Shown here: positions 2,775-48,511 of the stretch, in pieces
How positions within the stretch are numbered: position 1 is the stretch's first letter
Layout of the letters: each line of letters opens with the position of its first letter
Virus record (IMG/VR): IMGVR_UViG_3300034073_005389
Location: 186,001-250,000 of that record
DNA length: 64,000 nucleotides
Direction: 5' to 3' (one strand)
Translations under genes and position numbers: made by a program
Notes under the pieces: model-generated
What the model was told of the DNA's origin: nothing
Databases searched by the model: none
The model's input: only the letters and a program-made list of their open reading frames with translations

Positions 2775-4121
2775 TTATTTTAGATATTTGTCCATGTTAA
2801 TTGGCTTGCCAGTCAAAAGATTTTTCTCTTTAACTAAACGCGCCACTGAAGTATCTATATCCTTCTCTGTCGGAGTTTTTCGATTATTCGACAAAGCTTC
2901 AAACATAGAAGAAATATAAATATCTTTTAAATAAGCATAAGATAACTCATATTTTTCTGTATATTTGGCAAGCTCTTTACATTTTTTAGTTGTAATTAAA
3001 TTGCCAAACCATTTTTTAAGATAAGCAAAAGCCATTTCTTGATCAGGTAATGGAATCTCCATTTTTCTATCAAATCTAGAAGGTCTATCTGTAATAGATG
3101 GTTTCAGCTTTTTAATTTCATTAGCAGTAGCAACAATCAATAACCCATTCTTAGCAGCAATGCCATCCATCAAATTTAAGAAAGAAGAAATATCATTCTT
3201 CTCAAGAATAGAATCTAAATCCTCAAAAAATAACAAAGAAGGACTTTGATCTTCTGCATAAGCAAAAGCCTCTCTAATTGCATTATCATCAGCCCCAGGA
3301 ATAATTGTTACTGGCTTAAAATTATATTGAGCCATAATAGTGCGGATAAGCGAACTCTTTCCACATCCAGGCTTTCCATATAACAATACGCCTCTCTTCC
3401 AAGGCATTTTGTTTTTTTGATAAAATTCTTTACTAGCCAAAAAATTCTCTACTAATTTTTTTAGTTCTAACTTAATATTAGAAGGTAGAAATAAATCATC
3501 CCAAGAATGATCTTTAGTATATGGAATATCATCACCATCTACTACCCTAATATGAAGATTAGAGCGATCCCTTCTTTGTACCCACTCATCAAATGAGTTC
3601 CTAAAAACCAAATAATTATTATAATTAGAGTGAGATAATAAATTAAAAAACCCTACTTCGTCTTCATTTTGATTTCCTTTGTGAAACAAAGCACAATGAA
3701 TAAACTCTAGTTCTTTTGTCTTAATTAAGAAGATTCCTTGAACAAAAAACTTTTCATAAAAATGATCGGTTTTCCAACTAATAATAGAATCTTTATATAA
3801 ACATTGAACAGAAATATCATTATCTTCACAATATTGAAGAAATTGTCCGTCAATAATAATTCTATTATGAATAAACTTTTCAATATTTGAATTATTTTTT
3901 AATACTGAAGAAAAATGATGCTGTACCCAATTCATTAAATCAATAAAATTACTATCAGGTCGAGGAGTATCTACAACAATAGATCGATCTGTAATTAAGC
4001 TCTTTAATCTTTCCTCGCATAAATGCTCTTGCATTTCAATATCTTCAGGAGTAAGATATGATGCATCTTGTAATTTATTATCCATTTTTTTATTTGCTCT
4101 TTCTATATTTTTATATAACAA
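2775..4121 (-). CDS. AAA+ ATPase (classical clade, single AAA domain)
   Basis: Walker A GKPGCGKS, Walker B LLFFED, ATAN sensor, DRPSRFD arginine-finger region. Confidence 0.9.
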   Translation of the reverse strand: MLYKNIERANKKMDNKLQDASYLTPEDIEMQEHLCEERLKSLITDRSIVVDTPRPDSNFIDLMNWVQHHFSSVLKNNSNIEKFIHNRIIIDGQFLQYCEDNDISVQCLYKDSIISWKTDHFYEKFFVQGIFLIKTKELEFIHCALFHKGNQNEDEVGFFNLLSHSNYNNYLVFRNSFDEWVQRRDRSNLHIRVVDGDDIPYTKDHSWDDLFLPSNIKLELKKLVENFLASKEFYQKNKMPWKRGVLLYGKPGCGKSSLIRTIMAQYNFKPVTIIPGADDNAIREAFAYAEDQSPSLLFFEDLDSILEKNDISSFLNLMDGIAAKNGLLIVATANEIKKLKPSITDRPSRFDRKMEIPLPDQEMAFAYLKKWFGNLITTKKCKELAKYTEKYELSYAYLKDIYISSMFEALSNNRKTPTEKDIDTSVARLVKEKNLLTGKPINMDKYLK

Positions 4122-9938: not shown

Positions 9939-11402
9939 TTAATCCTTAGGTCTATATTGTCTAGTTATATGAGTTACTTTATCTCTAGTTTCTCTTTCTA
10001 ATATTCTTCTTCTTTCATCAGGAGAGGCTCCTGGATACAATATTTCATAATATTTACTTTTCATTTGCTTAATTTTATCGTCAATTAAAGCAAAATTACG
10101 AATTAATAAATCTGAATTAAATTCTTTTTCTAATGCATCCATGGATTCATCAATCAATGAATTGGCTTCATCGGATAATTGAATTAGCTCTACGCTAACA
10201 GCCACTCTTAAAGCTTCACTAGAATCTTCGGTGGTAAAGGTTGCTACTGATAATAAGTTATTAACTTTATTTTGATCGTCAAAAACATTATTTTCGTCTG
10301 GATTATTACTTAAATCCTCTTCGTCTTGTTGCTCTTCTTCTTTTGCTTTACTTTCTTCTACATTACGTTTAAGCCTCTCAAATGCATTAACTACGTTTTG
10401 AACTAAAACTTTGTCAGATTTATCATCAGCTTCACTAAATATGTTAATACTCTTAAGAAGTCTGTTATATAGTTTTCTTAATTCTAAGTTACTCAAACTA
10501 GGCGATAAAGCTCTAGCAAGATCGTCTATGTCATGGACAGTTTTTTTGTTTCTGTTTATAACAAGTTCTTTAACCTCATCAGGGGTGGGTTGATCGATAG
10601 GCGTAGATGAATCTTTGGAGGATGGTGCAGGGGCTGGCGTAGCGACTGGTGTAGCTGCTGGTGTAGCGGCAGGTTCTGTAGTAGGTGGTGGTTTTTCTTT
10701 TTCTTTTTTCTTATCTTGATCTGATTTAGGCTTTGCGGGCTCAGATTGTAAAGACTCTTTAATAGTTTCTAAAGAAACTCCTGAAGCAGCAGCAATTAAA
10801 TTAATTATTGAATTCCAATTTGACTCAATATTTAAAAATATTGATTTAGCATTTTTTACATCTTCTGTTGAAGGAGTGAATCTGTATAAATATCCTTTAC
10901 CTAATTTTCTTTCAAATTTCCTAATATCTCTATATAGTTGAAGCAAAGAATCTAATAAAGACATTCTATAGATGCGTTGCTTCCCGCCTTGCCCCCAACC
11001 AAAAGGACCAAAAGTAGGAGTAAGTAATTTAGTAAAAAATCTAGAAAAAATATTAGAAGCTTCAACAGTTAAAACTCCTTCATAATTTTCAATAGCTGCT
11101 GTTTTTTTCTTTTTTCTATTTTTAGAATAAGAGTCTTGCTCTTGTGTTATTTTTTCTGCTTTTTGAGCAATAGAGTTATACTTATTAGTTAAATTAGAAA
11201 TAATATCAACTGGATTACCAGGAATTGGTTCAATAATTTTAGATTTTTCTTGAAAAAAAACGCTAGGAGAGCCATTTATTAATTTTTTAAAATTAATAAC
11301 ATCATGAATTAATTCTGATACTTCTTTATTCCATTCTTGTTTATTCTGCCTTAGCTGTTCTTGAGCAGGATCAGAAGATGGTTTTCTAGCATATTTATTC
11401 AT
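9939..11402 (-). CDS. hypothetical protein with Pro/Ala/Thr linker and acidic tract (possible virion protein)
   Basis: 487-aa helical ORF; GAGG SD. Confidence 0.6.
   Translation of the reverse strand: MNKYARKPSSDPAQEQLRQNKQEWNKEVSELIHDVINFKKLINGSPSVFFQEKSKIIEPIPGNPVDIISNLTNKYNSIAQKAEKITQEQDSYSKNRKKKKTAAIENYEGVLTVEASNIFSRFFTKLLTPTFGPFGWGQGGKQRIYRMSLLDSLLQLYRDIRKFERKLGKGYLYRFTPSTEDVKNAKSIFLNIESNWNSIINLIAAASGVSLETIKESLQSEPAKPKSDQDKKKEKEKPPPTTEPAATPAATPVATPAPAPSSKDSSTPIDQPTPDEVKELVINRNKKTVHDIDDLARALSPSLSNLELRKLYNRLLKSINIFSEADDKSDKVLVQNVVNAFERLKRNVEESKAKEEEQQDEEDLSNNPDENNVFDDQNKVNNLLSVATFTTEDSSEALRVAVSVELIQLSDEANSLIDESMDALEKEFNSDLLIRNFALIDDKIKQMKSKYYEILYPGASPDERRRILERETRDKVTHITRQYRPKD
10636..10671. 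repeat. imperfect 12-bp tandem repeat x3 (coding AATP/VATP linker)
   Basis: ggcgtagcgact ggtgtagctgct ggtgtagcggca. Confidence 0.7.
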
Positions 11403-11429: not shown

Positions 11430-12017
11430 TCAGATAATCTGGTCAATTAAACCATACTGCAAAGCTTGCTTAGCATCCATCCAAACATCTTGCTTACAAT
11501 CTTCTTTTAGTTTTTCTAGTGGATGACCTGTATGCTGAGCTAAAATTTTCATAATATTATCATTATTTTCTTTAATAAAATCATAATAATTTTTTGAATT
11601 TATAATATCTTGACCTGGTAAAGGAAATGCGAACTGAATACCATGAATCATGATTTTGGATGACTTCATAGCATATCTTTCTCCTTTTGCTCCGGCAGCC
11701 AAAATAACTGCACCGGCAGAATAAGCTTTACCGGCACATATTGTTTTAACTGGAGCTGAAATCATCTGCATTACATCATAAATATTAGCTAATCCAGCGG
11801 CATCTCCACCATTTGAATGTATATAAATGGTAATTGGTTCTTCATGATTTTCGTTATCATAATAAAGTAATAAGGCAGCTAGTTCGGCAGCACTTTGTTT
11901 AGTAACATCTTCAGATAAGAAGATCATTCTATCTTTAGTTAATCTAATATATGTTTCTGCATACCCGGCTAATGGATTTTTAGCGGCATCATGATCTTGT
12001 AAAGAATGTTTCTTCAT
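11430..12017 (-). CDS. clpP: Clp protease proteolytic subunit, triad intact
   Basis: IHSNGG, KAYSAG (Ser), KIMIHG (His), QDVWM (Asp), YGLIDQI. Confidence 0.92.
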   Translation of the reverse strand: MKKHSLQDHDAAKNPLAGYAETYIRLTKDRMIFLSEDVTKQSAAELAALLLYYDNENHEEPITIYIHSNGGDAAGLANIYDVMQMISAPVKTICAGKAYSAGAVILAAGAKGERYAMKSSKIMIHGIQFAFPLPGQDIINSKNYYDFIKENNDNIMKILAQHTGHPLEKLKEDCKQDVWMDAKQALQYGLIDQII

Positions 12018-12023
12018 AAACCC

Positions 12024-12608
12024 TCATTTAGAAATAGAAATAACTTTGTCAATCAAACCATACTTTACAGCTTGATTTGCGTTCATAAACACTGTTCTTT
12101 CAAAATCTTCCATTACTTGTTTAAGTGGTTTATTACAAGATTTAGAAAAAATCTCCATCATTCTTTTGTTATCTGACATAGATTGGTCTAATATTTTCTT
12201 AGCGTCTGTTAAATTAGAATTAGAATACCAATCGTGTACTAATTGTCCTGCTGAAATAACAGAATTTTTAGTAGCGAATCTCATTCCAGGAGTTCCGCCT
12301 GCCAGAATAATAGCAGCCTCATCCATGGCAGAGCCAATACAAACAGTTTCAATAGGCGATTCAATCATAGACATGATATCATAAATCATTAATGCGTTAC
12401 GAATATCACCTCCATCAGAATTAATAAATAATGTAATTTTTTTAGAACAATCCTCTGCATCTTTTAGCAGAAGAGTTGCAACAATATCTGTGGCTAAATT
12501 ATCAGTAATTTGATTACATAAAAATAAAATTCTATCATTGGCTAATTTTTGATATACGTCAATAGCAATATCACCATTTTCGGTGTTTTCAATAACTAAT
12601 GTATTCAA
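12024..12608 (-). CDS. catalytically inactive ClpP paralog (ClpR-like)
   Basis: ClpP fold (DRILFL, INSDGGD, YGLIDKVI) but Ser->Asp (SAMDEA), His->Gly (ISAGQ), Asp->Thr (ERTVFM). Confidence 0.88.
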   Translation of the reverse strand: MNTLVIENTENGDIAIDVYQKLANDRILFLCNQITDNLATDIVATLLLKDAEDCSKKITLFINSDGGDIRNALMIYDIMSMIESPIETVCIGSAMDEAAIILAGGTPGMRFATKNSVISAGQLVHDWYSNSNLTDAKKILDQSMSDNKRMMEIFSKSCNKPLKQVMEDFERTVFMNANQAVKYGLIDKVISISK

Positions 12609-12964
12609 GGAATTGACCTCTTTCTTTGTTTTTCTTCTTTTTCTCTAATTTCTGCACATACTACACAAGTAGTAAAATATGGATTAATTTCTAATCTTTT
12701 ATGAGGAATTTCCTCTTCACAATCTTCACAAAGACCATAATTACAGTTATCAATTTTAGCAAGAGCCTCTTCAATTTTATTAATTTTATTCTTTTTAAGA
12801 ATAAGAAGTTGAGTGGCTGTGCCCATTAACATATTGCCTTGAATTTCATCGGTCTCATCTCCATCAATATCTACGCCGATATCATTCATAATTTGAGAAT
12901 ACAATATGTCTTTTTGAGACAATAAATCTTCTTTGATTTTTAAAATAAATTGCTTATTTAACAT
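12605..12964 (-). CDS. dksA: DksA/TraR C4 zinc-finger protein
   Basis: Coiled coil with DETD tip; YGLCEDCEEEIPHKRLEINPYFTTCVVC. Confidence 0.9.
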   Translation of the reverse strand: MLNKQFILKIKEDLLSQKDILYSQIMNDIGVDIDGDETDEIQGNMLMGTATQLLILKKNKINKIEEALAKIDNCNYGLCEDCEEEIPHKRLEINPYFTTCVVCAEIREKEEKQRKRSIP

Positions 12965-21748: not shown

Positions 21749-22102
21749 TGGTGGAGAATTGGGGAGTCGAACCCCATTCCGCAGAATATTATTATGTAAA
21801 CTCATTCACAAACTTAGCCAGTTTTACATCTCTAGCGATGTCAATAGATTTAGCTCTATTAAGCGATTCACTGTTGTTTTTATTATTAACCTCGTGACCT
21901 GATTAATAACTAACCTTGGTGGTTAAGTGTCTGTAGAATACTAAGGTTATCTCTTCTCAGACACCCAATCAGGCAGCTAGTGCCATTGGAGCAAATGCAT
22001 TATCGTTGGCATTTAAACGTCGATTGCTGGATTAACGGAATGGCAATCATTTCCTGTTTGCATTTACACAACTCTAAACCACGTCGAAACCAAGTATTCC
22101 CC
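21749..22102 (-). ncRNA. ssrA: tmRNA (transfer-messenger RNA), 354 nt
   Basis: Acceptor stem GGGGAAT/ATTCTCC-A-CCA with G3.U wobble, GGTTTCGAC D-region, T-arm TGGGG-TTCGACT-CCCCA, internal tag ORF, encoded CCA. Confidence 0.96.
21969..22010 (-). other. tmRNA tag reading frame ANDNAFAPMALAA*
   Basis: TTTAAAT then GCC AAC GAT AAT GCA TTT GCT CCA ATG GCA CTA GCT GCC TGA. Confidence 0.93.
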
Positions 22103-26344: not shown

Positions 26345-27235
26345 TTATATATAATTTTTAATTAGTTTAATAGCATTTTCTCGAGAAATATTTTGTTCTG
26401 GCTGAATAATTTTAGCTTTATATTTTATATTTTTTTTACCCCATTCACCAAGAAAAAAACTATTCGAATCAGACATAGGTAGTCTTGAAAAGGTAATCAT
26501 TTTTTTATTAGGATTATTTAAATTTTCTTGAGTCATACAAAATGTAAAAGGTCCTGAAGCCCTACCAATGATCATATCACAGTTTAAACTTAAATATGAT
26601 ATCTCATTTAAATCAGATCCAGATAACTTATTGACTATATCAGAAGTAAAAAAAATATTTAAAAATTTATTTTTTTCAAAATTAATTTTTTTTGTTAAAA
26701 TAAAATTTTTATTTTTATATAAAGAGGCTAGTTCAATAACAATTGAATCTAAGTTAATATTATAAGATTGATTTGATAAAGGTTGACCATTACAAAACAA
26801 AATGCTATTTTCAATATTTTTGATATTTTTAATATTAAAAACGTTATAATTTATAGATGGAAACATCTCTAATGGGTTTTTAAAAATATTTTCAATTTTT
26901 ATTGAAAAATGATTAAATATATCTTTAAATAAAAAATACAAACAATCAAGAGTGATTTTATATTTTTTTAAATATTTACTTTTGTTAGAGCCATACCAAG
27001 TATTTATGTAAATTTTATTGTCAATTTTAGTTATAAAATCATGTGATTTTATTTTTTTATAAATTTCAGAATCATATTGAATATATGACATGTCTTTCAA
27101 TATTTCCTCACCATTTTTGTGAGAATAAATATATTTGTATTTTTTTATTCCAATATTTTCACATAATTTTTTAACAAAATTTCTAGAAATATGGATATCT
27201 CCATTTCTGCAAGGATTATAAAAAATAATGTCCAT
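26345..27235 (-). CDS. GT9-like glycosyltransferase, family A copy 1
   Basis: NGDIHISR and DLNEISYLS..CD.IIGRASGP resemble the GT9 GD and L.E...L....D..IG.DSGP motifs. Confidence 0.55.
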   Translation of the reverse strand: MDIIFYNPCRNGDIHISRNFVKKLCENIGIKKYKYIYSHKNGEEILKDMSYIQYDSEIYKKIKSHDFITKIDNKIYINTWYGSNKSKYLKKYKITLDCLYFLFKDIFNHFSIKIENIFKNPLEMFPSINYNVFNIKNIKNIENSILFCNGQPLSNQSYNINLDSIVIELASLYKNKNFILTKKINFEKNKFLNIFFTSDIVNKLSGSDLNEISYLSLNCDMIIGRASGPFTFCMTQENLNNPNKKMITFSRLPMSDSNSFFLGEWGKKNIKYKAKIIQPEQNISRENAIKLIKNYI

Positions 27236-27249
27236 ATTTTTTATGTAAT

Positions 27250-27501
27250 TTATTTGCCATACATTTTAGTAGATCCTTGCTTATATAATTTTTGCAATTC
27301 TCCGGTACTACAAATATGGTTAATTTTTTCATCAATCTCTTGAATTAAGTCATTTCTTTGTTGATTGGCAATATTTGTTAATTTTGTGGCATCTGCGATT
27401 TGTTTATCAGAAGCGCTTTTATCCCTCTTTATATCTTCTGCCATCCAAATTCTAATATTTACTACTGTTAGTTTATCAATTAAATTGCCTATTGTATCCA
27501 T
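27250..27501 (-). CDS. small DUF4254-like helical protein, copy 1
   Basis: TIGNLIDKL...W..ED..R...NQQRNDLIQEID...KMY. Confidence 0.55.
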   Translation of the reverse strand: MDTIGNLIDKLTVVNIRIWMAEDIKRDKSASDKQIADATKLTNIANQQRNDLIQEIDEKINHICSTGELQKLYKQGSTKMYGK

Positions 27502-27508
27502 AATTACC

Positions 27509-28297
27509 TCAAATTTTGCATTTTAATATATCCTCTTGAGTATCATTTAACAATTTATTATAATTATAATTGTTTTTTACATCAGCCATAATCAATTTTT
27601 GATTATTTAAAATCTCAGTAGAATTTTCTTGAACAAAATAAAAAAAATCTAAATTATTTATATTGTACAAATCTTGTATAAATTCTCTTACGTTAAAAAG
27701 TCTACCAGCTCCTACAATAGAATCGCTTTTTGCCTTTATACTTTCTTCTACAATAAATTTAGTATGAACCATATCTCGATAAAAATTTAAATTATTTACT
27801 TGTATTTTCTTTTTATTTAAAATTGAATCAAATATTTTACCAAATAAAAAATATTGAGATCTATGAACTGAATTAAAATAAAATGGGTGAATAAATAAAA
27901 TTTTATTGTATCTAATGTCAAACTTTTGAAGCTCTTTTATTTTATTAAATAATAATAATTTTGATAAGATATATTCATTATTTAATGGATAAAAATTTGG
28001 AAGAGTGCTTAAAGATATTTTTCCAGATAAGTTATTCCACAACTCACATGTAGTATAACAAATTATCTTATTACAATTTTCAATTAAAGAATTAATTATT
28101 TTTAATGTATACAAATAATTAGGACTAATATAGTCAATATTATTTTCGTAAATTCTTTGCTCTGCAAAAGTAATATAAACTGAATTATATTCAGTATTTT
28201 TTAATAACTTAAAATCAATATCTCTAGAAGATATTTTAACATAGTCTTCAGGAAAATATTTTGATAATTGAGATGTATTACCAATTACTAAATTCAT
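27509..28297 (-). CDS. divergent NAD-dependent epimerase/dehydratase (extended SDR)
   Basis: Degenerate Gly motif VIGNTSQLS, TTCE, YILSK (YxxxK), YRDMVH, VGAG. Confidence 0.6.
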   Translation of the reverse strand: MNLVIGNTSQLSKYFPEDYVKISSRDIDFKLLKNTEYNSVYITFAEQRIYENNIDYISPNYLYTLKIINSLIENCNKIICYTTCELWNNLSGKISLSTLPNFYPLNNEYILSKLLLFNKIKELQKFDIRYNKILFIHPFYFNSVHRSQYFLFGKIFDSILNKKKIQVNNLNFYRDMVHTKFIVEESIKAKSDSIVGAGRLFNVREFIQDLYNINNLDFFYFVQENSTEILNNQKLIMADVKNNYNYNKLLNDTQEDILKCKI

Positions 28298-28899
28298 TTT
28301 TTTATTTTAAAAATATAATTATATTTTATTTTATTTACTAACTCATAACCAATAGACTTCATATATGTCTCATATTCTGGTAAATATAAATAATTTTCTA
28401 ACAAAATTATTTCAGGCTGATATTTTTTAGTATCAAATCCTTTCATTACTTCCAATTCCCATCCCTCTGTATCAATTGATACAAAATCAACTTTTTCTAC
28501 TTTTATTTTATCTAATAAAGTATTTAATTTTAAAATTTGAACTTTTATTTCTTTAATTTTATGTGATCCTTTTAAAGGATATTTAAGATCAATTGCAGAA
28601 TAACTAATACCATTTGCATGTTGCGGCCATCCAGTCTCTACAATTTTAAATGAAGATAATTTTTCTTCATTAGCGCAAGCAAATTGGTAAATTTCATTTC
28701 CGGCTTTCTTATGGCTTTCAACAAATTTAGGATTAGGATCGATGCAAATACATCTCCAACCATGATCTCTAAAATGCTTTGACATGCTAAAAAAATCAAC
28801 TGGACCAGCACCAACTTCAACCATAACTTTTTTTTCTAAAAAATTAGGAAAAAAATTTTCTCTGATATATTTATCTGTTTCTAATTCGGCGTAATACAT
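28294..28899 (-). CDS. FkbM family methyltransferase
   Basis: VEVGAG, IDPNP, DFVSIDTEGWELEVMKG. Confidence 0.88.
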   Translation of the reverse strand: MYYAELETDKYIRENFFPNFLEKKVMVEVGAGPVDFFSMSKHFRDHGWRCICIDPNPKFVESHKKAGNEIYQFACANEEKLSSFKIVETGWPQHANGISYSAIDLKYPLKGSHKIKEIKVQILKLNTLLDKIKVEKVDFVSIDTEGWELEVMKGFDTKKYQPEIILLENYLYLPEYETYMKSIGYELVNKIKYNYIFKIKK

Positions 28900-28905
28900 A
28901 AATTC

Positions 28906-30123
28906 CTAAAAACTTATAATTTCAAAATTGGGGCAAGGAACAATAAACTTACCACCATTGGCTAGATAATCTATTTCTCTATGATAAAATTCATTTATAA
29001 AATGCCAGGGTAGTACTAATAAATAGTCTGGCTTTTTTTTACGCATCTCATCTTCAGAATATATAGGAATATTAGTTCCAACAGTTTTTAAACCAAATTT
29101 ATAAACACTTCTTTCAGCAATTCCATCTATTAAAGTATGATCTAATCCAAAATACTGTAACAAAGTATTGCCTTTAGTAGATGCGCCATATCCCCAAATT
29201 ACTTTTCCCTTTTCTTTTTCTTTTTTTATAAAATTTACAGTTTTTTCTTTTAATTTATTAATTTTAATAAAAAAATTTTTCCAAGTATCAATAGAATTTA
29301 AATTTAATTTTTCTTCGTGTAAAAGTAAAGATTTGATTCTAAAATCACAAACATCTCTATAAGGTTGAGTGGCAAAAGTTTTTTCGTTTCCAACATCTTT
29401 CATTACATAAACTCTAAATGATCCGCCATTTGTATCGTTTAAATGACAATCAACAATTTTAAATTTATTTTTTTCTAAAAGATTTTTTAAATTAAATAAA
29501 GAATAATAATAAATATGTTCATGGCAAATATTATCAAACGCTAGTTGAGATAACATTAATGGAGTGTAACTTAATTGCAGCACCCATAAACCATCATCAT
29601 CTAAAACATCATATATATCTTTGACAAAAGAGTTGGGATCTTCTAAATCGTAAAACATAGCAATTGATGTAATAATTTTGGGTTTTAGATTACCGTATTT
29701 GCTATTTTTAAAATTAAAAGAAGTAAAATAATTTTGAATTATTACATCAGCATGTTTTGATGACTCTTTTACGAAAGATTCATCGGCAGGGTCTATGCCA
29801 ATTTTTATTAAATAATCTGGTAAAAAACTTAACAAAGTACCATCATTGCATGCAATATCTAACCAAACATCATTTTCTTTTAATTTTTTTACTTTTAAAA
29901 TAGATTCAGTAATGTCTTTTAATTCTTCTTTCATTGAATTATTTGTACCAGACCTATACCAATATTTGCCATACATTGTTTCTAGCGGTGCTGATTTTTC
30001 TAACCTAACCAACCCATCCTCAAGCATAACAAGTTTCATTTCAACTTTGTCACCTCTAGGCAGCTCATCATTTTTAATGAAATCAGAAACATAAAGGCTT
30101 CCCAAACTAAATAAATCTTTCAT
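28906..30123 (-). CDS. NDP-hexose C-methyltransferase (TcaB9/EryBIII-like)
   Basis: YWYRSG, LDIACNDGTLL, SIAMFYD, CHEHIYYYS, GGSFRV, GYGASTKGNTLL, PDYLLVLPWHF. Confidence 0.88.
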   Translation of the reverse strand: MKDLFSLGSLYVSDFIKNDELPRGDKVEMKLVMLEDGLVRLEKSAPLETMYGKYWYRSGTNNSMKEELKDITESILKVKKLKENDVWLDIACNDGTLLSFLPDYLIKIGIDPADESFVKESSKHADVIIQNYFTSFNFKNSKYGNLKPKIITSIAMFYDLEDPNSFVKDIYDVLDDDGLWVLQLSYTPLMLSQLAFDNICHEHIYYYSLFNLKNLLEKNKFKIVDCHLNDTNGGSFRVYVMKDVGNEKTFATQPYRDVCDFRIKSLLLHEEKLNLNSIDTWKNFFIKINKLKEKTVNFIKKEKEKGKVIWGYGASTKGNTLLQYFGLDHTLIDGIAERSVYKFGLKTVGTNIPIYSEDEMRKKKPDYLLVLPWHFINEFYHREIDYLANGGKFIVPCPNFEIISF

Positions 30124-30125
30124 TA

Positions 30126-30758
30126 TTAACCTCTAATATAAAAATCATTTACTTCTACTCTTTTATCTTTTTTCCAGCCCTTTTCTTTCAAAAAAGATTC
30201 AATAAAAGGCTCATTAAAATTATTCTCTATTACCATAAGTTTTGTATTATATTTATTTACATCAAAAGATTTTAGTACATCTAATTCATTTCCTTCAGTA
30301 TCTATAGAGATAAAATCTATTACTTTATGATTAAAGTGATTTGTTATGCACCAATCTAATCTTCTTGATTTTACTTTAATATCTTTTTTTTGTGGCTGTA
30401 ATCCTAATTTTTCATGACTAAGAATCAGTCTGTCATCAATTTCTAATCCGCTAATAGAAGATTGGTTTGCGGTTTTCATGGTAACAACAGTGAAATTAAC
30501 ATCATCTATATTTTTACTAGAAACAGCATAGTTAATAGCATTTTTTCTGTTCTTTTTTAGAGAGATAAAGTAATGTGGATTTGGCTCAATGCATAGCGCA
30601 TTCCACCCATTTTTTTCAAAATGCAATGTATTAGAAATAAAAATTCCGTCTACAGCACCAACTTCAATACAATTACCTGTTTTTTGATTGGGAAAATAAT
30701 TTTTTATTATTTTGTCAATTGGAGGATTAAATTGACCATGAAATTTAGTATATATCAT
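30126..30758 (-). CDS. FkbM family methyltransferase
   Basis: IEVGAVDG..SNT..FE..GW..LCIEPNP, DFISIDTEGNE. Confidence 0.88.
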   Translation of the reverse strand: MIYTKFHGQFNPPIDKIIKNYFPNQKTGNCIEVGAVDGIFISNTLHFEKNGWNALCIEPNPHYFISLKKNRKNAINYAVSSKNIDDVNFTVVTMKTANQSSISGLEIDDRLILSHEKLGLQPQKKDIKVKSRRLDWCITNHFNHKVIDFISIDTEGNELDVLKSFDVNKYNTKLMVIENNFNEPFIESFLKEKGWKKDKRVEVNDFYIRG

Positions 30759-30763
30759 TTTAC

Positions 30764-31672
30764 CTACATATTATTTTTAATTATGTTAAAAACATTTTCT
30801 AAGTTTGTTTCGTTTGATTGTATAATTTTTGCCTTATATTTAATATTTTTTTTACCCCAATCACCAAGATAAAAATCTCCTACACCGGATTTAGACAAAT
30901 TTGAAAAAGTAATCATTTTCTTATTAGGATTGTCAAAATTTTCTCTTACCATAGAAAAAGAAAATGGTCCAGAGGCTCTGCCAATAATTGTATCACATTT
31001 TAAACTTAAATAGGAAATTTCATTTAAATCTGAACCTGATTTTTTATTTATTATTTCTGAAGTAAAAAAAATATTTTTATTTTTTTTACTTAAATCATTA
31101 GTAACAATAAAATTAAAATTTGGATATTGAGAAGATAATTTTAAAATAATATTAGTAAAATCAAAATTTGATGCTTGATTTGACATAGCCAATCCATTAC
31201 ATATTAAAATATTTTTTTTATTTTTAAATTGATCATAAAATTGATCAATTTTACTAATTTCAAAAAAATTATAATTAATTTGTGGCAAAATGTCTAAAGG
31301 ATTAGCAAAAACATTTTCTATTTTTAGATTAAATTTTAAAAAAATATCTTTAAAAAGAAAATATAGGCAATCAAAAGTAATTCCATGTTTTTTTATATAC
31401 TTACTATTATCAGCAGAAAACCAAGTATTAATATAATTGTCATCATTATATTTTACAAATAAACTAGTATGAGGGACTTTTTTTCTAATTTCTTTTCCAT
31501 CATTTAATTTTAAATGACTTATATTGGGTAAATCTGCTAATAGGCAAGAATCATTTTTATGAAAATAAAAAAAATTATTTGAAGAAATTAATTTAGACAT
31601 AGCAGAAATAAAATTTCTAGAAATATGAATATCTCCATTTCTGCAATAATTATAAAATATAATTTTACTCAT
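30764..31672 (-). CDS. GT9-like glycosyltransferase, family A copy 2
   Basis: Same NGDIHISR and DLNEISYLSLKCD.IIGRASGP blocks as 26345. Confidence 0.55.
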   Translation of the reverse strand: MSKIIFYNYCRNGDIHISRNFISAMSKLISSNNFFYFHKNDSCLLADLPNISHLKLNDGKEIRKKVPHTSLFVKYNDDNYINTWFSADNSKYIKKHGITFDCLYFLFKDIFLKFNLKIENVFANPLDILPQINYNFFEISKIDQFYDQFKNKKNILICNGLAMSNQASNFDFTNIILKLSSQYPNFNFIVTNDLSKKNKNIFFTSEIINKKSGSDLNEISYLSLKCDTIIGRASGPFSFSMVRENFDNPNKKMITFSNLSKSGVGDFYLGDWGKKNIKYKAKIIQSNETNLENVFNIIKNNM

Positions 31673-31691
31673 TTATTATAATGGATTAATA

Positions 31692-32789
31692 TTATATTAA
31701 TTTACTATAATCTTTTACAGATTTTATAATAAAATTTATTTCGTTATTAGACAAATCTGGAAAACTAGGAAGAATAATACATTCTTTATTTAGAATTTTT
31801 GCGTTAGTTTCTGAATTTATTTGTATTCTATTATTACTTAATAAGTGATGATGGGTTGACGCTGGATAAAACATAGGTCTAATTTCTATATTTTTAGATT
31901 TAAAAAATGATTCTACTTTTTCATAAGAGTAGTTTCCGGCAATTCTAATTCCAAACATCCAATTAGAGTGAAAAGTATTTTCAGACTCTTCTTGAAGCAT
32001 AATATTATTAATATTGCTAAGCTCTTTTTTATATTTAAAAAATAAATTTTTCTTTTTTTCTAAAATCTCATCTAAAATCTCTAATTGCCCTAATAATATA
32101 GCAGCCTGAATGTTTGTAATTCGATAATTATAGCCTAATTCAGAATGAATAAACCTTGTGCTAGATTGCCCTTGTCCATGAACACATTTTATATATTGAA
32201 AAACATCATCATCATTGATGATAACGGCGCCACCTTCGCCAGAAGTTATATTTTTATTGCCAAAAAAAGAAATAGAAGAAGCAAAAGATTCTGTACCAGA
32301 ATATTTATTATTATATTTTCCAAATAATCCTTCACAATTATCTTCTACATAGACTAAATCTGGGTATTTTTCTTTTAAATTTGGAACATTAATTATATTC
32401 CCAAGGTTATGAACAACTAATAATGCATGATCTTTTTTATTTTTTATTTTAGATTCATCAATATTCCAGGTATTTAAATTAGCATCGATAGTTTGAATTT
32501 TATAATTTTTATCAAATAAAAAACTATTCCATGCAGCTACATATACATTATTTGGTGCCGTAATGTTTTTAATTTGCGGATATTTTTTATGCAGTGCTTT
32601 TGCTACAAGATGAGTTGCACTAGTTCCATTATTTACTAATAATAAATTTTTTACATTTAAAATTTCTTTTAATTTTTCTGTTGCTAAATCTATATATTTA
32701 CCTTGAGAAGATACCCAGGTAGAATCTAATGCATCATGTGCATAACGTAAAGATTTTTTAGTAAAAAATGGCTTATAAACTGGAATCAT
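31692..32789 (-). CDS. DegT/DnrJ/EryC1/StrS PLP aminotransferase (perosamine synthase-like)
   Basis: WVSSQG.YI, NGTSATHL, VEDNCE, SFFGNKNITSGEGG (PLP Lys), GYNYRITNIQAA, LPS. Confidence 0.92.
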   Translation of the reverse strand: MIPVYKPFFTKKSLRYAHDALDSTWVSSQGKYIDLATEKLKEILNVKNLLLVNNGTSATHLVAKALHKKYPQIKNITAPNNVYVAAWNSFLFDKNYKIQTIDANLNTWNIDESKIKNKKDHALLVVHNLGNIINVPNLKEKYPDLVYVEDNCEGLFGKYNNKYSGTESFASSISFFGNKNITSGEGGAVIINDDDVFQYIKCVHGQGQSSTRFIHSELGYNYRITNIQAAILLGQLEILDEILEKKKNLFFKYKKELSNINNIMLQEESENTFHSNWMFGIRIAGNYSYEKVESFFKSKNIEIRPMFYPASTHHHLLSNNRIQINSETNAKILNKECIILPSFPDLSNNEINFIIKSVKDYSKLI

Positions 32790-32803
32790 GATTTACCTAA
32801 AAA

Positions 32804-33112
32804 TTAATACGTTTTGTGTGATCTTTGTAAAAATTTACCATTATCTAATTCTTCGCCAGTCTGTAATGCTTTCATCATTTCAATTAATTTTGAATCAATT
32901 TCGTTAATTAACTGATTTCTTTGAACATTTAAATCACAAGCTTTTTTTAACACTTCCCATAATTTTTTTGCACCATCTTCAGAATCAAAATATTTTAATT
33001 TGTACTCATCAAAAGACATTCTTCTGATTTCATACAATAGCTCTTGATTGTTCCACATTTTCATATCTACAGTGCATAGTTTGTCAACTAAATTTCCAAG
33101 CGTATCAGACAT
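32804..33112 (-). CDS. small DUF4254-like helical protein, copy 2
   Basis: TLGNLVDKL...W..QE...NVQRNQLINEID...HKTY, paralog of 27250. Confidence 0.55.
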   Translation of the reverse strand: MSDTLGNLVDKLCTVDMKMWNNQELLYEIRRMSFDEYKLKYFDSEDGAKKLWEVLKKACDLNVQRNQLINEIDSKLIEMMKALQTGEELDNGKFLQRSHKTY

Positions 33113-33521
33113 TCTTGCTCCATTTCATTATAAATAATGATTCTTTTTCCTCTATAACAAAGAAATTATATTTTTTATATAAATTAATTGCTTTATAATT
33201 ATCTTTATCTACAGTTAGATAGATGTCTATGATGCCTAACACTTTAGATATATTAATCAGTATATCAATGCAGTAAGATCCTAAATGCTTACCAATATAA
33301 CTATCAGAAACTAAAATGCCCAGCCAAATCTTATTATTTTCTTCTTCTAAATGACAATAAGCTGCTGGAATATTATTTTCTAATATAATAAAAGACTGCA
33401 AGTGAGATTGCGTAATCTCTAGACGCCTAGTATTAAAATATCTAAATTTTTTAATACCCTCTTTAGAAGAGTTTAACAAACTAGACAGTAACTGCACATC
33501 AGTTCTTACAATCTTTCTCAT
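33105..33521 (-). CDS. GNAT family N-acetyltransferase
   Basis: WLGILV..SYIGKHLG, IYLTVDKDNYKAINLYKKYNF. Confidence 0.88.
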   Translation of the reverse strand: MRKIVRTDVQLLSSLLNSSKEGIKKFRYFNTRRLEITQSHLQSFIILENNIPAAYCHLEEENNKIWLGILVSDSYIGKHLGSYCIDILINISKVLGIIDIYLTVDKDNYKAINLYKKYNFFVIEEKESLFIMKWSKNV

Positions 33522-33524
33522 ACT

Positions 33525-34088
33525 TTATTTTCTTTTTAAGACGGCAAGCCTGTCAACAACTTCTACTAAAACCCACTTATCATATTTATTGCCTTCTAAA
33601 TACTTTTTAATATAAGTGCCTCTACCAAAAGTCCAATCATGGCACAATACATATGTACCTGTTTTTGAAAAATCTGATTCTATTTTTTTAAAATGAAATA
33701 AATTTTCAGATTCTTTCTTCTGAAAGAAAGATCCTTCTCCATAGTCTTTACCAGGAACAACCCAAGCAGAGTTTACTAATTTTTCATCACCTGCATCTAA
33801 AAAGTACATATCAGCAATAATTTTTCTGTCAAAAAATTTTAAAGAATCTTCTAAGTTCATTTCTACAATTTTCTTAGTAACATAATCGTTTAAAATTTTT
33901 TTAGCAGAATCAAAATACTCTTTACCTAATTCATAGGTAATTAATTTGCCTTTTTTATTATGCAATAAAGCTTTACAAAACTCTAAACCACTTGTAGCAG
34001 ATTTGCCTGTACCAAATTCAACTATCACATTTGGCTTCAATTTTGTTACATAATTAAATATTGCTTTCTTTTCTATTCCATTTGGCAT
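33525..34088 (-). CDS. class I SAM-dependent methyltransferase
   Basis: IVEFGTG, LITYEL, DSL, DMYFLDAG, LCHDW. Confidence 0.75.
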   Translation of the reverse strand: MPNGIEKKAIFNYVTKLKPNVIVEFGTGKSATSGLEFCKALLHNKKGKLITYELGKEYFDSAKKILNDYVTKKIVEMNLEDSLKFFDRKIIADMYFLDAGDEKLVNSAWVVPGKDYGEGSFFQKKESENLFHFKKIESDFSKTGTYVLCHDWTFGRGTYIKKYLEGNKYDKWVLVEVVDRLAVLKRK

Positions 34089-34101
34089 AATTCCTCTAAA
34101 T

Positions 34102-34938
34102 TTATTTCTTATTTAAATTTTTTAACAGTCTTTCTTTATTAATGTAATCTGGTAGATTTACACTAAGTTTTTTAATTCCTTTTTTCACTTCTTTGTTTGG
34201 ATGCATTCCAATATCATAACCATAGACTTGATTAGGTTTTACGTTATTTAAATTTACATTCCAACACTGAGTTAAAAAATCTTTTTTATTAGGCAAATAA
34301 GTTAGTTTGTATTTAACTCTACTATCTCCTACATAAGCAAAATGAAAATACCTAGACTCATTATCAAAATATGTTGGAGGATATTGCTTGGTAATGGTGC
34401 AATGACCATAAATATTTCCCTTTTTATGCCTAGCAATTCTACCCCACCCTAATGTCATGGTATCTTGCTTAAGGTCAGCGTTGCAAAAAATATGATCTGC
34501 GTCTTTAAAAAAGACATAATGAGGAAAGTCATATGATTGATGCTTGTCATTTGATGCAAAAAAATCATCTACTTTATCAAATGTTTCTTGAGTAAAGAAT
34601 TCATCAGCATCAGTGCACCAAAAGACATTCATATCATCTTTAACATATTGAGAGCCACGAACAAACATTTGTTTTTTTCCAGCCACTGACATACCAATAT
34701 CTGTTCTTACTCCAGATAAATCTTTATTATCTAATATAATAATCTTTTTTTCTGGATCTGGATATTTTTTTAAAAAATCTAGTGAGCCATCTGTAGAATT
34801 AGAATATGGCGTTTTAGTAACACATAAATCATAAAATATAAGTTGATCAAAATTTTTATACAAAAATGGTAACTTTTCTACTAGAAAAGGATATTCATTA
34901 TAACAAATTTGGAAATGGCAATGTTTTAATTTTTTCAT
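34102..34938 (-). CDS. GT2-like glycosyltransferase
   Basis: CYNEYPFL, STDGS..FL, WCTDADEFF (DxD), HFAY. Confidence 0.7.
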   Translation of the reverse strand: MKKLKHCHFQICYNEYPFLVEKLPFLYKNFDQLIFYDLCVTKTPYSNSTDGSLDFLKKYPDPEKKIIILDNKDLSGVRTDIGMSVAGKKQMFVRGSQYVKDDMNVFWCTDADEFFTQETFDKVDDFFASNDKHQSYDFPHYVFFKDADHIFCNADLKQDTMTLGWGRIARHKKGNIYGHCTITKQYPPTYFDNESRYFHFAYVGDSRVKYKLTYLPNKKDFLTQCWNVNLNNVKPNQVYGYDIGMHPNKEVKKGIKKLSVNLPDYINKERLLKNLNKK

Positions 34939-34943
34939 AATTA

Positions 34944-35507
34944 TTATCTTAAATAAATTGGTTTTAAATGTAAATATGGTCCTGGTACACGATCTTTAGG
35001 CTTATAATCTCTAATTTTAGAGGTATGAAAATGATAAGTTTTGATGGTTAATGAGGGATTAGATATTTTATATCCTGATTCTTTGATCTCATGCGCAACC
35101 CTATTATCACAACCAGGTCTCCCTAAGAAATAATTGCCCACTATTTTTTTTAATGAACCTTTAAAAATCCAAGTATCTTGAGAAAAAACTTTGTCCCAAA
35201 ATTTAATATTAGATGGCGAAAGATAATCCCATCTAGTTAAAGCATACGCTTCCTCATGATCCATTTTTAATGTTAAATTAATTGTATCATCAAAAAATAT
35301 ATCAGAGTTGCATATGATGTTTATGTCATCAGGACCGGTATTCTGATTAATTTTATCAAAATAAAAATCAAAAGTTAATCTATTTTGATGATTAATTAAA
35401 ATTACATTTAAATGTTTATTTTGTAAATTTTTATTTTTACAAAAATCTATTTCATAAGCTCTTTTAGGATCTGGATGTTTAAAATAATTATAATATAAAT
35501 TGATCAT
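34944..35507 (-). CDS. short GT-A-like protein, family B copy 1
   Basis: CNSDIFFD, ALTRWD, SQDTWIF, LG.PGCDNR, KTYH.H.S; paralog of 36461. Confidence 0.55.
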   Translation of the reverse strand: MINLYYNYFKHPDPKRAYEIDFCKNKNLQNKHLNVILINHQNRLTFDFYFDKINQNTGPDDINIICNSDIFFDDTINLTLKMDHEEAYALTRWDYLSPSNIKFWDKVFSQDTWIFKGSLKKIVGNYFLGRPGCDNRVAHEIKESGYKISNPSLTIKTYHFHTSKIRDYKPKDRVPGPYLHLKPIYLR

Positions 35508-35528
35508 ATATTTATATGCAAATATGGT

Positions 35529-36458
35529 TTATTTTTTTATATAATTATTAATTATATTTAAAACTGCAGAATCATTTGTCTCTTTAGACTCAACAATTCT
35601 GGCAGGATATTTTATATTTTTAAGACCCCAATCACCCAGCCAAAAATTCTTACCTCCACTTAACCCAGAAAAAGTCAATAATGTCTTGTTTGGATTTAAA
35701 TAATTTTCTTTACACATAGAAAAAGTGAATGCGCCTGATGCTCTACCAATAACCAAATCGCATTTTAAACTTAAATATGAGGTTTCGTTTAAATCAGAAC
35801 CTTTTGTCTTTTTTATAATATCTGAGGAATAAACCACATTAGGATATGCCCTCCTATCAAAATTAGGATCTTTTTCTTTAAAAGTTAAAATCCATTTTCT
35901 ATTTGGATGCATTTTGGCTAATTTTAAAATAATAGGTGTAAAATTAAAATTTTTAGCCTGACCAGATCTAGCGTGATTATTACAAACTAGAACAGGAGAT
36001 ACTTTATTTTGAGAGTGAAAAGTATCAATATTTTTAATAAATGTAGGGTGCAAATTTTTATAATTAATTGCAGGAAAAAAATAAAAAGGGTCTTTTGATA
36101 TATCTTCTAATTTTAGACCCAATCCCGCATAAATATCTTGAAATATAAAATACAAAGTATCAAAGTTAAATCCATTAGCTTTATTTGAATACTTATAATT
36201 ATTTACTCCATACCAAGTACCAGCATAAAAAGTATTATTTTTAACTATGTGAACATTTTTATTGTCTGCCTGTTTTAACAAATTAGCATCAAATTTTAAA
36301 CCTTTTATATCTTCTAATAGTTTGGGGTCATTTTTATGAGAAAAATATATCTCATATTTATTTCCTAAATGCTTAACAACTTCAGAAATAAAAGTTCTGG
36401 AGATATGAATATCTCCATTATTAAAATGATTAAAGAAAACAATTTTATTATAGCTCAT
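35529..36458 (-). CDS. GT9-like glycosyltransferase, family A copy 3
   Basis: NGDIHISR, DLNETSYLSLKCDLVIGRASG. Confidence 0.55.
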   Translation of the reverse strand: MSYNKIVFFNHFNNGDIHISRTFISEVVKHLGNKYEIYFSHKNDPKLLEDIKGLKFDANLLKQADNKNVHIVKNNTFYAGTWYGVNNYKYSNKANGFNFDTLYFIFQDIYAGLGLKLEDISKDPFYFFPAINYKNLHPTFIKNIDTFHSQNKVSPVLVCNNHARSGQAKNFNFTPIILKLAKMHPNRKWILTFKEKDPNFDRRAYPNVVYSSDIIKKTKGSDLNETSYLSLKCDLVIGRASGAFTFSMCKENYLNPNKTLLTFSGLSGGKNFWLGDWGLKNIKYPARIVESKETNDSAVLNIINNYIKK

Positions 36459-36460
36459 AA

Positions 36461-37983: not shown

Positions 37984-37984
37984 T

Positions 37985-48489: not shown

Positions 48490-48511
48490 TTAATTCTCCG
48501 AAATTTATATA

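What the first reader, a model, noticed from the sequence alone, without database searches (positions are those of the whole stretch)
11430..12608. Phage-encoded ClpP/ClpR pair: active protease next to a paralog missing the whole triad
Seen: 11430 keeps Ser, His and Asp; adjacent 12024 has Asp, Gly and Thr at those positions yet is full-length. The dead copy keeps the canonical N-terminal hairpin (LVIENTENGDIAIDVYQKL), while the active copy's N-terminus is divergent. Known: inactive ClpR subunits form heteromeric cores in cyanobacteria, plastids and apicomplexans; I do not recall this in a phage. Inference: a heteromeric phage Clp core with split catalytic and ATPase-docking roles, or a subunit that poisons or redirects host ClpP.
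Basis: partly seen in the sequence, partly recalled or inferred. Interest (0 to 1): 0.75.

Follow-up and report, generated by a model that had tools for sequence, protein, structure and literature searches.

The report
Huge-phage ClpP with obligate dead partner
A clade of environmental huge phages carries a tightly linked pair of ClpP protease genes, one catalytically intact and one that has lost its whole active site. The dead copy is as strongly conserved as the live one, which points to a phage-built two-subunit protease core resembling the ClpP/ClpR cores of cyanobacteria and plastids.

Summary
Window 11430-12017 (A, 195 aa) is a ClpP with Ser-His-Asp. Adjacent 12024-12608 (B, 194 aa) is a full-length ClpP homolog with Asp/Gly/Thr at those positions and a canonical N-terminal hairpin. 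A's first 24 residues are divergent and model as disordered.

B is not decaying. It belongs to one clade of about 35 clusters (at 50% identity) in which no member keeps the triad. ML dN/dS is 0.048 for B and 0.050 for A. The order B then A held in 27/27 IMG/VR contigs found with B and 45/45 found with A, down to 35-44% identity. The genes sit in an operon-like block with a DksA/TraR-like gene.

The record is a 361-kb subsurface/freshwater huge phage. It has no ClpX/ClpA-type ATPase and no ClpS, but it has a tmRNA whose tag ends in ALAA.

My best reading (about 0.55) is a heteromeric ClpP/ClpR-like core that runs on host unfoldases. Modelling supports A-B binding (ipSAE 0.78, best control 0.00). 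Ring architecture, division of labour and substrates are inferred.

I rate it a new variant of a known kind. I found no paper describing it.

The parts
12024..12608 (-). B: triad-less ClpP paralog ('ClpR-like'), 194 aa, TTG start. It has Asp96/Gly121/Thr172 at the Ser/His/Asp positions and a canonical N-terminal hairpin.
   Evidence: The TTG start is conserved in 23/24 loci.
11430..12017 (-). A: catalytically intact ClpP paralog, 195 aa, with Ser100/His125/Asp177. Its N-terminal 24 residues are divergent and predicted disordered. The handle strand is remodelled (HG-IQ-x-x-FP-x-PG-x-D).
   Evidence: The triad is S-H-D or S-H-E in 45/45 relatives.
12018..12023 (-). 6-nt B-A spacer (GGGTTT) after B's TGA stop. 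A GAGGG Shine-Dalgarno-like motif spans the stop. No promoter-like site lies in the junction, and the one terminator-like hit (12474-12451) lies inside B's coding sequence.
   Evidence: B-A spacing is -4 to +13 nt in 22 of 24 loci.
12605..12964 (-). DksA/TraR-type zinc-finger gene directly upstream. Its stop overlaps B's TTG start by 4 nt. It is a conserved operon neighbour, and its functional link to the Clp pair is unknown.
   Evidence: The synteny appears.
9939..11402 (-). Conserved 487-aa ORF directly downstream of A (449-833 aa in relatives). It has no family match and a low-complexity Pro/Thr/Ala linker. It may be an accessory factor or substrate, or it may be unrelated.
21749..22102 (-). 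Phage tmRNA with tag ANDNAFAPMALAA. It may feed substrates into a ClpX-dependent pathway. This link is an inference from context only.
   Evidence: Full-length tmRNA occurs in 10/12 related records, about 7.5-13 kb from the pair. Tags in relatives end in MAA, AQAA and PLAA.

Best explanation
A and B are the two subunits of one phage-encoded ClpP-type proteolytic core. A supplies the serine-protease sites. B is a non-catalytic structural subunit, analogous to ClpR, that keeps the canonical axial N-terminal hairpin. The two genes are made from one transcript with tight translational coupling. They co-assemble through ordinary ClpP lateral and handle interfaces. The phage encodes no Clp unfoldase, so the core would be driven by host ClpX/ClpA/ClpC-type ATPases. 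Its job would be to degrade host or stalled-translation products during infection, possibly including proteins tagged by the phage's own tmRNA.

Shown: the sequence features, conservation, linkage, purifying selection and the lack of a phage Clp ATPase. Inferred: co-assembly (in-silico support only), ring architecture, use of host unfoldases, B as the preferred docking or gating subunit, and the substrates.
For: Both proteins are full-length ClpP homologs, and each scores higher against cellular ClpP models than against head-maturation models.

The triad is absent in all 120 close homologs of B and in about 35 clusters at 50% identity that form a single clade.

The order B then A held on the same strand in 27/27 IMG/VR contigs found with B and 45/45 found with A. 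Four further contigs show it at down to 40% identity (L006, L007, L035, L036). A fifth at 35% identity (L037) ends inside the downstream ORF. All 34 other phage ClpP-likes were single S-H-D/E genes.

ML omega is 0.050 for A and 0.048 for B. For the closest pairs, NG86 gives 0.047-0.053 for B. Mean dN is lower for B (0.286) than for A (0.323), and pairwise dN values correlate at r = 0.87.

Gene junctions are a 4-nt overlap and a 6-nt spacer.

The A2B2 model gave ipSAE 0.78 (median of three runs) against a best control of 0.00. That mark was reached by 58 of 80 solved complexes and 2 of 110 mismatched pairs. The calibration holds only roughly here because I supplied my own alignments and used multiple copies.

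The B model has pLDDT 92.6 with an N-terminal hairpin and superposes on ClpP structures at TM 0.93 and 1.6 A. Residues 1-24 of A model as disordered.

Both families carry a 2-3 residue insertion at the same spot in the handle strand and a shared near-invariant Asn in the handle helix.

The genome gave no hit to ClpX, AAA_2 or ClpS models. Only 1 of 12 related records has a strong AAA_2 match.

A precedent for split roles exists in Streptomyces ClpP1P2 (PMC9765437).
Against: There are no expression or protein data. No RNA run was listed for this locus.

The complex model may score high simply because ClpP assemblies are well represented among solved structures. Any two ClpP paralogs might pass (caveat).

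The host and its Clp ATPases are unknown.

A keeps largely hydrophobic residues at the columns I map, from memory of E. coli ClpP numbering, to the docking pocket. A clean division of labour is therefore not established.

The model placed A and B as lateral neighbours, which cannot be extended to a strictly alternating seven-membered ring.

The genome's prohead protease was not identified, so a virion-maturation role is not formally excluded.
Confidence: 0.55

Rival explanations
1. Gate-less, unfoldase-independent protease. A's N-terminus is non-canonical and disordered, which leaves the axial pore of A-containing rings open. The A/B core would then degrade unfolded or nascent host proteins without any ATPase, much like ADEP-deregulated ClpP. 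B would serve only as an assembly or activation scaffold.
For: Residues 1-24 of A are variable, do not align with the canonical gating loop and model with pLDDT below 50. No Clp ATPase is encoded by the phage. From established knowledge, truncating or displacing ClpP's N-terminal loops opens the pore and permits ATPase-independent degradation of unfolded proteins. PMC7327170, listed, concerns FtsZ degradation by ADEP-activated ClpP.
Against: B retains a canonical hairpin under strong purifying selection, which suggests that gating or unfoldase contact still matters. Disorder in a monomer model is weak evidence. A's N-terminal segment keeps its length and a conserved GY...Y motif, so it is not simply deleted.
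Confidence: 0.15
2. B is a decoy or poison subunit aimed at the host. It would co-assemble with host ClpP, or cap host ClpX/ClpA, to block host Clp proteolysis of phage proteins. A would act separately.
For: B keeps the ClpP interfaces and the canonical N-terminal hairpin but has no active site. Dead subunits are a classic way to inhibit oligomeric enzymes (general knowledge).
Against: B never occurs without A immediately downstream, and A never occurs without B. Their evolutionary rates are correlated. Both share lineage-specific handle changes. All three points indicate co-adaptation to each other rather than to diverse host ClpPs. The family spans phages of very different GC content and environments, and so probably different hosts, which a host-matched decoy would have to track.
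Confidence: 0.12
3. The pair is the phage's head-maturation (prohead or scaffold) protease. Many tailed phages use ClpP-fold S14 enzymes for this.
For: PHROG head-maturation families are hit (phrog_94 at 6e-29 for A). No S77 or S78 prohead protease was found in this genome.
Against: Both score far higher against cellular ClpP models than against the ClpP-related head-maturation model. The cellular model NF001368 gives 164 and 172 bits. The head-maturation model NF045542 gives 64 and 43 bits, below its cut-off of 120. Both proteins are free-standing, about 195 aa long, with the full ClpP handle. Their conserved neighbours are HU, DksA/TraR, DUF192, FtsK and topoisomerase, not portal or capsid genes. 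The negative prohead-protease searches are weak, because the S77 control rang nowhere.
Confidence: 0.08

Closest known systems
Cyanobacterial ClpP3/ClpR and plastid/apicoplast ClpP/ClpR cores
   Same: A ClpP homolog that lacks the whole catalytic triad is retained beside a catalytic ClpP paralog as part of one protease core (PMC7966870). The non-catalytic subunit is full-length and under selection.
   Different: B sits in a separate clade from the other non-S-H-D ClpP-like sequences in the tree, so it appears to be an independent loss. It is encoded by a virus that has no ClpC, ClpX or ClpS of its own. The residues replacing the triad are not conserved across the family. Ring stoichiometry is unknown here.
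Streptomyces ClpP1P2, and likewise the Mycobacterium, Listeria, Chlamydia and Pseudomonas ClpP1/ClpP2 heterotetradecamers
   Same: Two adjacent or paired clpP paralogs form one asymmetric core. In Streptomyces, ClpP1 confers proteolytic activity and ClpP2 is the only partner of ClpX/ClpC (PMC9765437). B's model superposes best on M. tuberculosis ClpP1P2 chains, at TM 0.93.
   Different: In those bacterial systems both paralogs keep the triad residues, whereas here one has lost all three. Those systems are cellular, and their stacked homo-heptamer architecture is established. For the phage pair the architecture is open: the 2+2 model mixed A and B within a ring.
Single canonical ClpP genes of jumbo and huge phages (group 1/2.2 jumbo phages, phage G ClpXP, Lak phages, LR756504.1)
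   Same: These are phage-borne, cellular-type ClpPs, proposed to target host proteins or support proteostasis (PMC7824862; PMC12484599).
   Different: Those are lone S-H-D genes (34 single-copy loci). In phage G the ClpP comes with a phage ClpX. The clade studied here always carries the dead partner and generally has no Clp ATPase.
ClpP-related phage head-maturation proteases (NF045542, phrog_94)
   Same: They share the S14 fold and occur in phages.
   Different: A and B fall below that model's cut-off. They are not fused to or next to scaffold or capsid genes, and they retain the ClpP N-terminal and handle elements.

Membership tests
ClpP (Pfam PF00574 / MEROPS S14 fold) | Full-length homology to the CLP_protease domain | tested here: met
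   A scores 172.7 bits and B 160.8 bits against a cut-off of 20.2. The B model superposes on ClpP structures at TM 0.93.
ClpP (catalytically competent subunit) | Ser-His-Asp catalytic triad at the conserved positions | tested here: met
   This applies to A only: S100/H125/D177. The triad is S-H-D in 34 and S-H-E in 11 of 45 orthologs. B does not meet it (D96/G121/T172), so B is a ClpP-fold pseudoenzyme rather than a protease.
ClpP equivalog (NCBIfam TIGR00493) | Score above the curated equivalog cut-off of 308.6 bits | tested here: not met
   A scores 146.1 bits and B 147.7 bits. Both are divergent subfamily members, not orthologs of housekeeping bacterial ClpP.
ClpP | Assembly into two stacked heptameric rings and functional coupling to a Clp AAA+ unfoldase | not testable with these tools
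   I have only a 2+2 model. No unfoldase gene is present in the genome.
ClpR (cyanobacterial/plastid non-catalytic subunit) | ClpP homolog lacking the catalytic triad | tested here: met
ClpR (cyanobacterial/plastid non-catalytic subunit) | Orthology with cyanobacterial or plastid ClpR (shared descent) | tested here: inconclusive
   The B clade (35 representative clusters, support 96) is separate from the other non-S-H-D ClpP-like representatives. B also scores best against generic ClpP models. No named ClpR reference sequence was available to place in the tree. My working view is independent origin.
ClpR (cyanobacterial/plastid non-catalytic subunit) | Co-assembles with a catalytic ClpP paralog into one core | tested here: inconclusive
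   The evidence is in silico only: ipSAE 0.78 against a best control of 0.00, plus obligate gene linkage.
ClpP-related head-maturation protease (NF045542) | Score above the cut-off of 120 bits, and location in the portal/scaffold/capsid module | tested here: not met
   A scores 64.4 and B 43.2 bits. Their neighbours are HU, DksA/TraR, DUF192, FtsK and topoisomerase.

The most novel reading that the evidence does not exclude
An ancient virus-specific ClpP/pseudo-ClpP heterocomplex arose independently of cyanobacterial and plastid ClpR. It would act as a phage-controlled proteolytic chamber plugged onto host unfoldases. One face (B) would be gated and dock the unfoldase. The other (A) would have a non-canonical, possibly open pore. 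Together with the phage's own tmRNA, whose tags end in -AA, it would give the phage its own trans-translation and degradation pathway, or a host-shutoff protease that behaves like ADEP-deregulated ClpP.
Probability: 0.2. Interest if true: 0.8.

Novelty: new variant of a known kind. Interest (0 to 1): 0.62.

Why it matters
Heteromeric ClpP cores with non-catalytic subunits have been studied only in cyanobacteria, plastids and apicoplasts. Why cells keep dead subunits in a protease chamber is still debated.

This pair offers a compact two-gene, apparently independent instance. It has hundreds of natural sequence variants and no organelle-import or essentiality complications, so the question could be tested directly in E. 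coli or in vitro.

It would also show that huge phages can bring a redesigned protease core and borrow host unfoldases. That bears on how large phages remodel host proteostasis, and on ClpP as an antibacterial target.

Tried and rejected
- **B as a decaying pseudogene:** rejected. Omega is 0.048, and the full-length family spans about 35 clusters at 50% identity.
- **Jug gut phage identity (PMC12880540):** I considered this because the genome size and GC content are similar. I rejected it because the DNA is held by subsurface, soil and freshwater metagenome runs.
- **Phage-encoded unfoldase partner:** none was found. ClpX, AAA_2 and ClpS models gave no hits in the genome. The 448-aa AAA protein at 2775-4121 is Cdc48/VAT-like and nothing links it to ClpP. 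One relative has a 739-aa Hsp100-like protein with no obvious IGF/IGL tripeptide.
- **Did A and B arise by duplication within the phage lineage?** Unresolved. The free tree separates them, but a single A+B clade is not rejected (p-AU 0.48).
- **Downstream 487-aa ORF:** Pfam, PHROG and Atlas searches gave nothing.
- **Expression evidence:** no RNA run was listed.
- **Distant-family locus scan:** the scan with the 33-sequence alignment failed for lack of conserved stretches. I repeated it with closer sequences.
- **GTDB species genomes:** a pattern scan for B found no relative. Its sensitivity is limited to close relatives.
- **Capsid and prohead-protease Pfam searches:** these found nothing. 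The terminase search gave one weak sub-cut-off hit (19.1 bits). The Gp23 and S77 controls rang nowhere, so these results are uninformative.

Full report
**What is there.**
- Two adjacent minus-strand ORFs sit at 11430-12017 (A, 195 aa, ATG start) and 12024-12608 (B, 194 aa, TTG start).
- Both are full-length members of the ClpP family. Pfam PF00574 E-values are 9.1e-51 and 4.2e-47.
- Both score much better against cellular ClpP models than against the ClpP-related head-maturation model. NF001368 gives 164 and 172 bits. NF045542 gives 64 and 43 bits, under its cut-off of 120.
- Neither reaches the equivalog cut-off for housekeeping ClpP.
- Residue-level alignments to solved ClpPs show that A keeps Ser100, His125 and Asp177. 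B has Asp96, Gly121 and Thr172 at those columns.
- B's N-terminus aligns with the canonical axial loop. AlphaFold2 models it as a hairpin followed by helix A, at mean pLDDT 92.6. The model superposes on ClpP structures at TM 0.93 and 1.6 A.
- A's first 24 residues are variable and His-rich. They keep only a GY...Y motif, do not align with the canonical loop and model at pLDDT below 50.

**Whose genome.**
- The window is bases 186001-250000 of a 361,490-bp IMG/VR virus record, about 33% GC overall and 97% complete by CheckV.
- The window also holds an RIIA-like gene, a PurZ-like adenylosuccinate synthetase, an NAD-dependent ligase, a topoisomerase, FtsK, HU and a tmRNA.
- The same DNA is present in subsurface, soil and freshwater metagenome runs.
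- Relatives that carry the same pair are IMG/VR contigs of up to 481 kb. One of 452 kb has direct terminal repeats.
- This is an environmental huge phage. It is not one of the gut 'Jug' phages that I first suspected from size and GC content.

**B is a conserved family, not a wreck.**
- The 5.8-billion-protein search found 754 relatives at E <= 1e-10. The best 120 are all at least 69% identical and about 194 aa long. None has Ser, His or Asp at the triad columns: D115/N4/A1, then S92/G15/N9/T3/C1, then R103/K11 and others.
- The exhaustive search of 50%-identity representatives shows about 35 further clusters at 35-72% identity that also lack the triad. The replacement residues vary, so no alternative catalytic residue is conserved.
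- Canonical S-H-D ClpPs appear only below about 1e-33.
- These dead sequences form one supported clade (99 by SH-aLRT; 96). That clade is separate from the other scattered non-S-H-D ClpP-likes.

**Obligate pairing.**
- Every locus recovered with B has an A-type gene immediately downstream on the same strand. This covers 27 IMG/VR contigs plus NCBI, JGI and Logan contigs.
- The block DksA/TraR, B, A, large ORF, DUF192, FtsK(topoisomerase) persists in relatives only 40-44% identical to B. At 35% identity the contig ends inside the ORF downstream of B, so only the DksA/TraR-B part is seen there.
- Searching from the A side gives the mirror result. All 45 A-family contigs have a triad-less B directly upstream. 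The 34 more distant phage ClpP-likes are single genes, 33 with S-H-D and one with S-H-E.
- The triad of A is S-H-D in 34 loci and S-H-E in 11 loci.
- In the window, the DksA-like stop overlaps B's TTG start by 4 nt. B's TGA stop is followed by 6 nt and then A's ATG, with Shine-Dalgarno-like motifs at both junctions.
- B starts with TTG in 23 of 24 loci. A starts with ATG in 21 of 24.

**Selection.**
- I analysed codon alignments of 24 non-redundant pairs, 189 codons each.
- A GY+F3X4+G4 model gives omega = 0.050 for A and 0.048 for B.
- NG86 on the closest pairs gives 0.047-0.053 for B and 0.029-0.053 for A. The medians of about 0.21 are inflated by saturated dS.
- Mean dN is lower for B (0.286) than for A (0.323). 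Pairwise dN values of the two genes correlate at r = 0.87.
- The dead subunit is constrained at least as strongly as the live one.

**Origin.**
- A and B are each monophyletic on long stems.
- The free tree does not join them, but a single A+B clade costs only 0.71 log-likelihood units (p-AU 0.48). A duplication within the phage lineage is therefore possible but not shown.
- Relative to canonical ClpP, both share a 2-3 residue insertion right after the His column in the handle strand. Both also share a near-invariant Asn in the handle helix (A N152, B N147).
- Those are the elements that form the ring-ring interface in ClpP (established structural knowledge). I read the shared changes as co-adaptation of that interface. 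This is an inference.

**Modelling of the complex.**
- A 2A+2B prediction gave ipSAE 0.65, 0.78 and 0.78, against 0.00 for all three controls.
- That mark was reached by 58 of 80 solved complexes and 2 of 110 mismatched pairs in the tool's calibration. The calibration applies only roughly here.
- The confident contacts join one lateral face of A (residues 23-55, 74-85) to the opposite lateral face of B (1-32, 61-65, 91-93, 113-117). They also join both handles.
- This supports binding through ordinary ClpP interfaces. Any two ClpP paralogs might score this way from memory of solved structures. A four-chain model also cannot decide between stacked homo-rings and mixed rings.

**Partners and context.**
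- The genome has no match to ClpX (TIGR00382), AAA_2 or ClpS models.
- Its classical AAA proteins include a Cdc48/VAT-like 448-aa protein 7 kb away. Nothing ties it to ClpP.
- Among 12 large related records, only one has a strong AAA_2 hit. It is a 739-aa Hsp100-like protein in which I saw no IGF/IGL-type tripeptide.
- A core built from A and B would therefore have to use host unfoldases or act without one.
- The phage has a tmRNA with tag ANDNAFAPMALAA. Ten of 12 relatives have a full-length tmRNA about 7.5-13 kb from the pair (coordinates). The tags ARAGORN could read end in MAA, AQAA or PLAA.
- A C-terminal Ala-Ala is the ClpX-recognised end of bacterial SsrA tags (established knowledge). 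A link between phage trans-translation and this protease core is therefore plausible but untested.

**Mechanism and rivals.**
- My best explanation (0.55) is a heteromeric ClpP/ClpR-like core. A is catalytic and B is a non-catalytic subunit that keeps the canonical gating and docking loop. The core would be driven by host Clp ATPases.
- Rival 1 (0.15): an unfoldase-independent, open-gate protease in which B acts as scaffold.
- Rival 2 (0.12): B is a decoy against host ClpP or ClpX.
- Rival 3 (0.08): the pair is a head-maturation protease.
- The 'split roles' idea is attractive because the losses are complementary. It has a bacterial precedent in Streptomyces ClpP1P2, where ClpP1 confers activity and only ClpP2 binds ClpX/ClpC (PMC9765437).
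- However, A still has mostly hydrophobic residues at the columns that I map, from memory of E. coli ClpP numbering, to the IGF-loop pocket. Docking cannot be assigned to B alone.

**Comparison and novelty.**
- Functionally the pair resembles the cyanobacterial, plastid and apicoplast ClpP/ClpR cores (PMC7966870) and the bacterial ClpP1P2 heterocomplexes.
- It differs in four ways. It is viral. It seems to be an independent loss of the triad. It comes without any Clp ATPase or adaptor. It is an invariant two-gene cassette across a deep clade of huge phages.
- ClpP genes in jumbo phages are already known (PMC7824862; phage G ClpXP, PMC12484599; a lone canonical copy in LR756504.1).
- Eight full-text searches in all (six of them aimed at a phage ClpR-like or triad-less ClpP) found no description of such a gene. 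That library lacks most subscription journals.
- I rate it a new variant of a known kind.

**Caveats.**
- Everything about assembly, stoichiometry, unfoldase use and substrates is inferred.
- There are no transcript or protein data. No RNA run was listed.
- The host is unknown.
- The residue-role assignments that use E. coli numbering rest on my memory of that structure and on consensus alignment, not on a reference sequence supplied by a tool.

Noticed in passing
window 21749-22102 (-); L126-L130: The phage encodes a tmRNA with tag ANDNAFAPMALAA. Ten of 12 related huge-phage records also have a full-length tmRNA, always about 7.5-13 kb from the ClpP pair. Readable tags are ANDNAFAMAA, ANDNAFVPMAQAA (twice) and ANDNNAFVQMPLAA, all ending in -AA like ClpX-recognised SsrA tags.
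   Followed up: partly
G000:C1 about 347,000-361,490 (L043:5500-19991): In the last 15 kb or so of the virus record, GC jumps from about 32% to 45-62% and long ORFs become sparse. Only a MYG1/UPF0160 exonuclease gene was recognised (L043:13031-13891). This is probably a chimeric join or host flank, which would explain the 'provirus' label. It is not part of the window.
   Followed up: partly
window 43318-44457 (-): A short adenylosuccinate-synthetase homolog (379 aa) matches phrog_1211 at 6e-75. It is PurZ-like, which hints at 2-aminoadenine (Z-base) DNA in this phage.
   Followed up: no
window 2775-4121 (-): A 448-aa single-domain classical AAA+ protein. Its closest solved relatives are VAT/Cdc48/p97 and B. 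subtilis YjoB, and it has a 200-aa N-terminal domain of unknown type. It could be a phage unfoldase. No evidence links it to the ClpP pair.
   Followed up: partly
window 46828-49639 (-): A DUF2201 putative metallopeptidase/VWA-like protein (553 aa) lies next to a roughly 375-aa MoxR-like ATPase (phrog_1297), in the local GC peak of 35-38%. Relatives have ATPase ORFs of about 370-385 aa with weak AAA_2 hits that may be the same gene; homology to this ORF was not checked.
   Followed up: no
L125:1469-3688 (-) = G010:C1 about 353,968-356,187: One related 473-kb phage encodes a 739-aa two-AAA Hsp100 (ClpA/ClpB-like) protein (AAA_2, 211.8 bits), far from its ClpP pair. I saw no IGF/IGL-type ClpP-docking tripeptide in the expected loop.
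   Followed up: partly
window 12606-12608 and the B genes of L003-L034: B uses a TTG start in 23 of 24 loci, here overlapping the upstream DksA-like stop. A uses ATG in 21 of 24. The non-ATG start is conserved and may set subunit stoichiometry.
   Followed up: partly
L053, L054, L056, L057, L066-L071, L090 (A orthologs): In 11 of 45 A-family genes the triad Asp is replaced by Glu (S-H-E). This variant is rare among ClpPs.
   Followed up: no
window 9939-11402 (-): A 487-aa ORF is conserved directly downstream of A across the clade (449-833 aa in relatives). It has a Pro/Thr/Ala-rich low-complexity linker, matches no family and models poorly (Atlas pLDDT 0.50).
   Followed up: partly
window 26345-40447 (-): A run of methyltransferase genes includes an 820-aa double methyltransferase and a C-methyltransferase. 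In relatives, NTP-transferase and RmlD-like genes lie just upstream of the Clp block. Together these suggest a sugar- or nucleotide-modification module.
   Followed up: no
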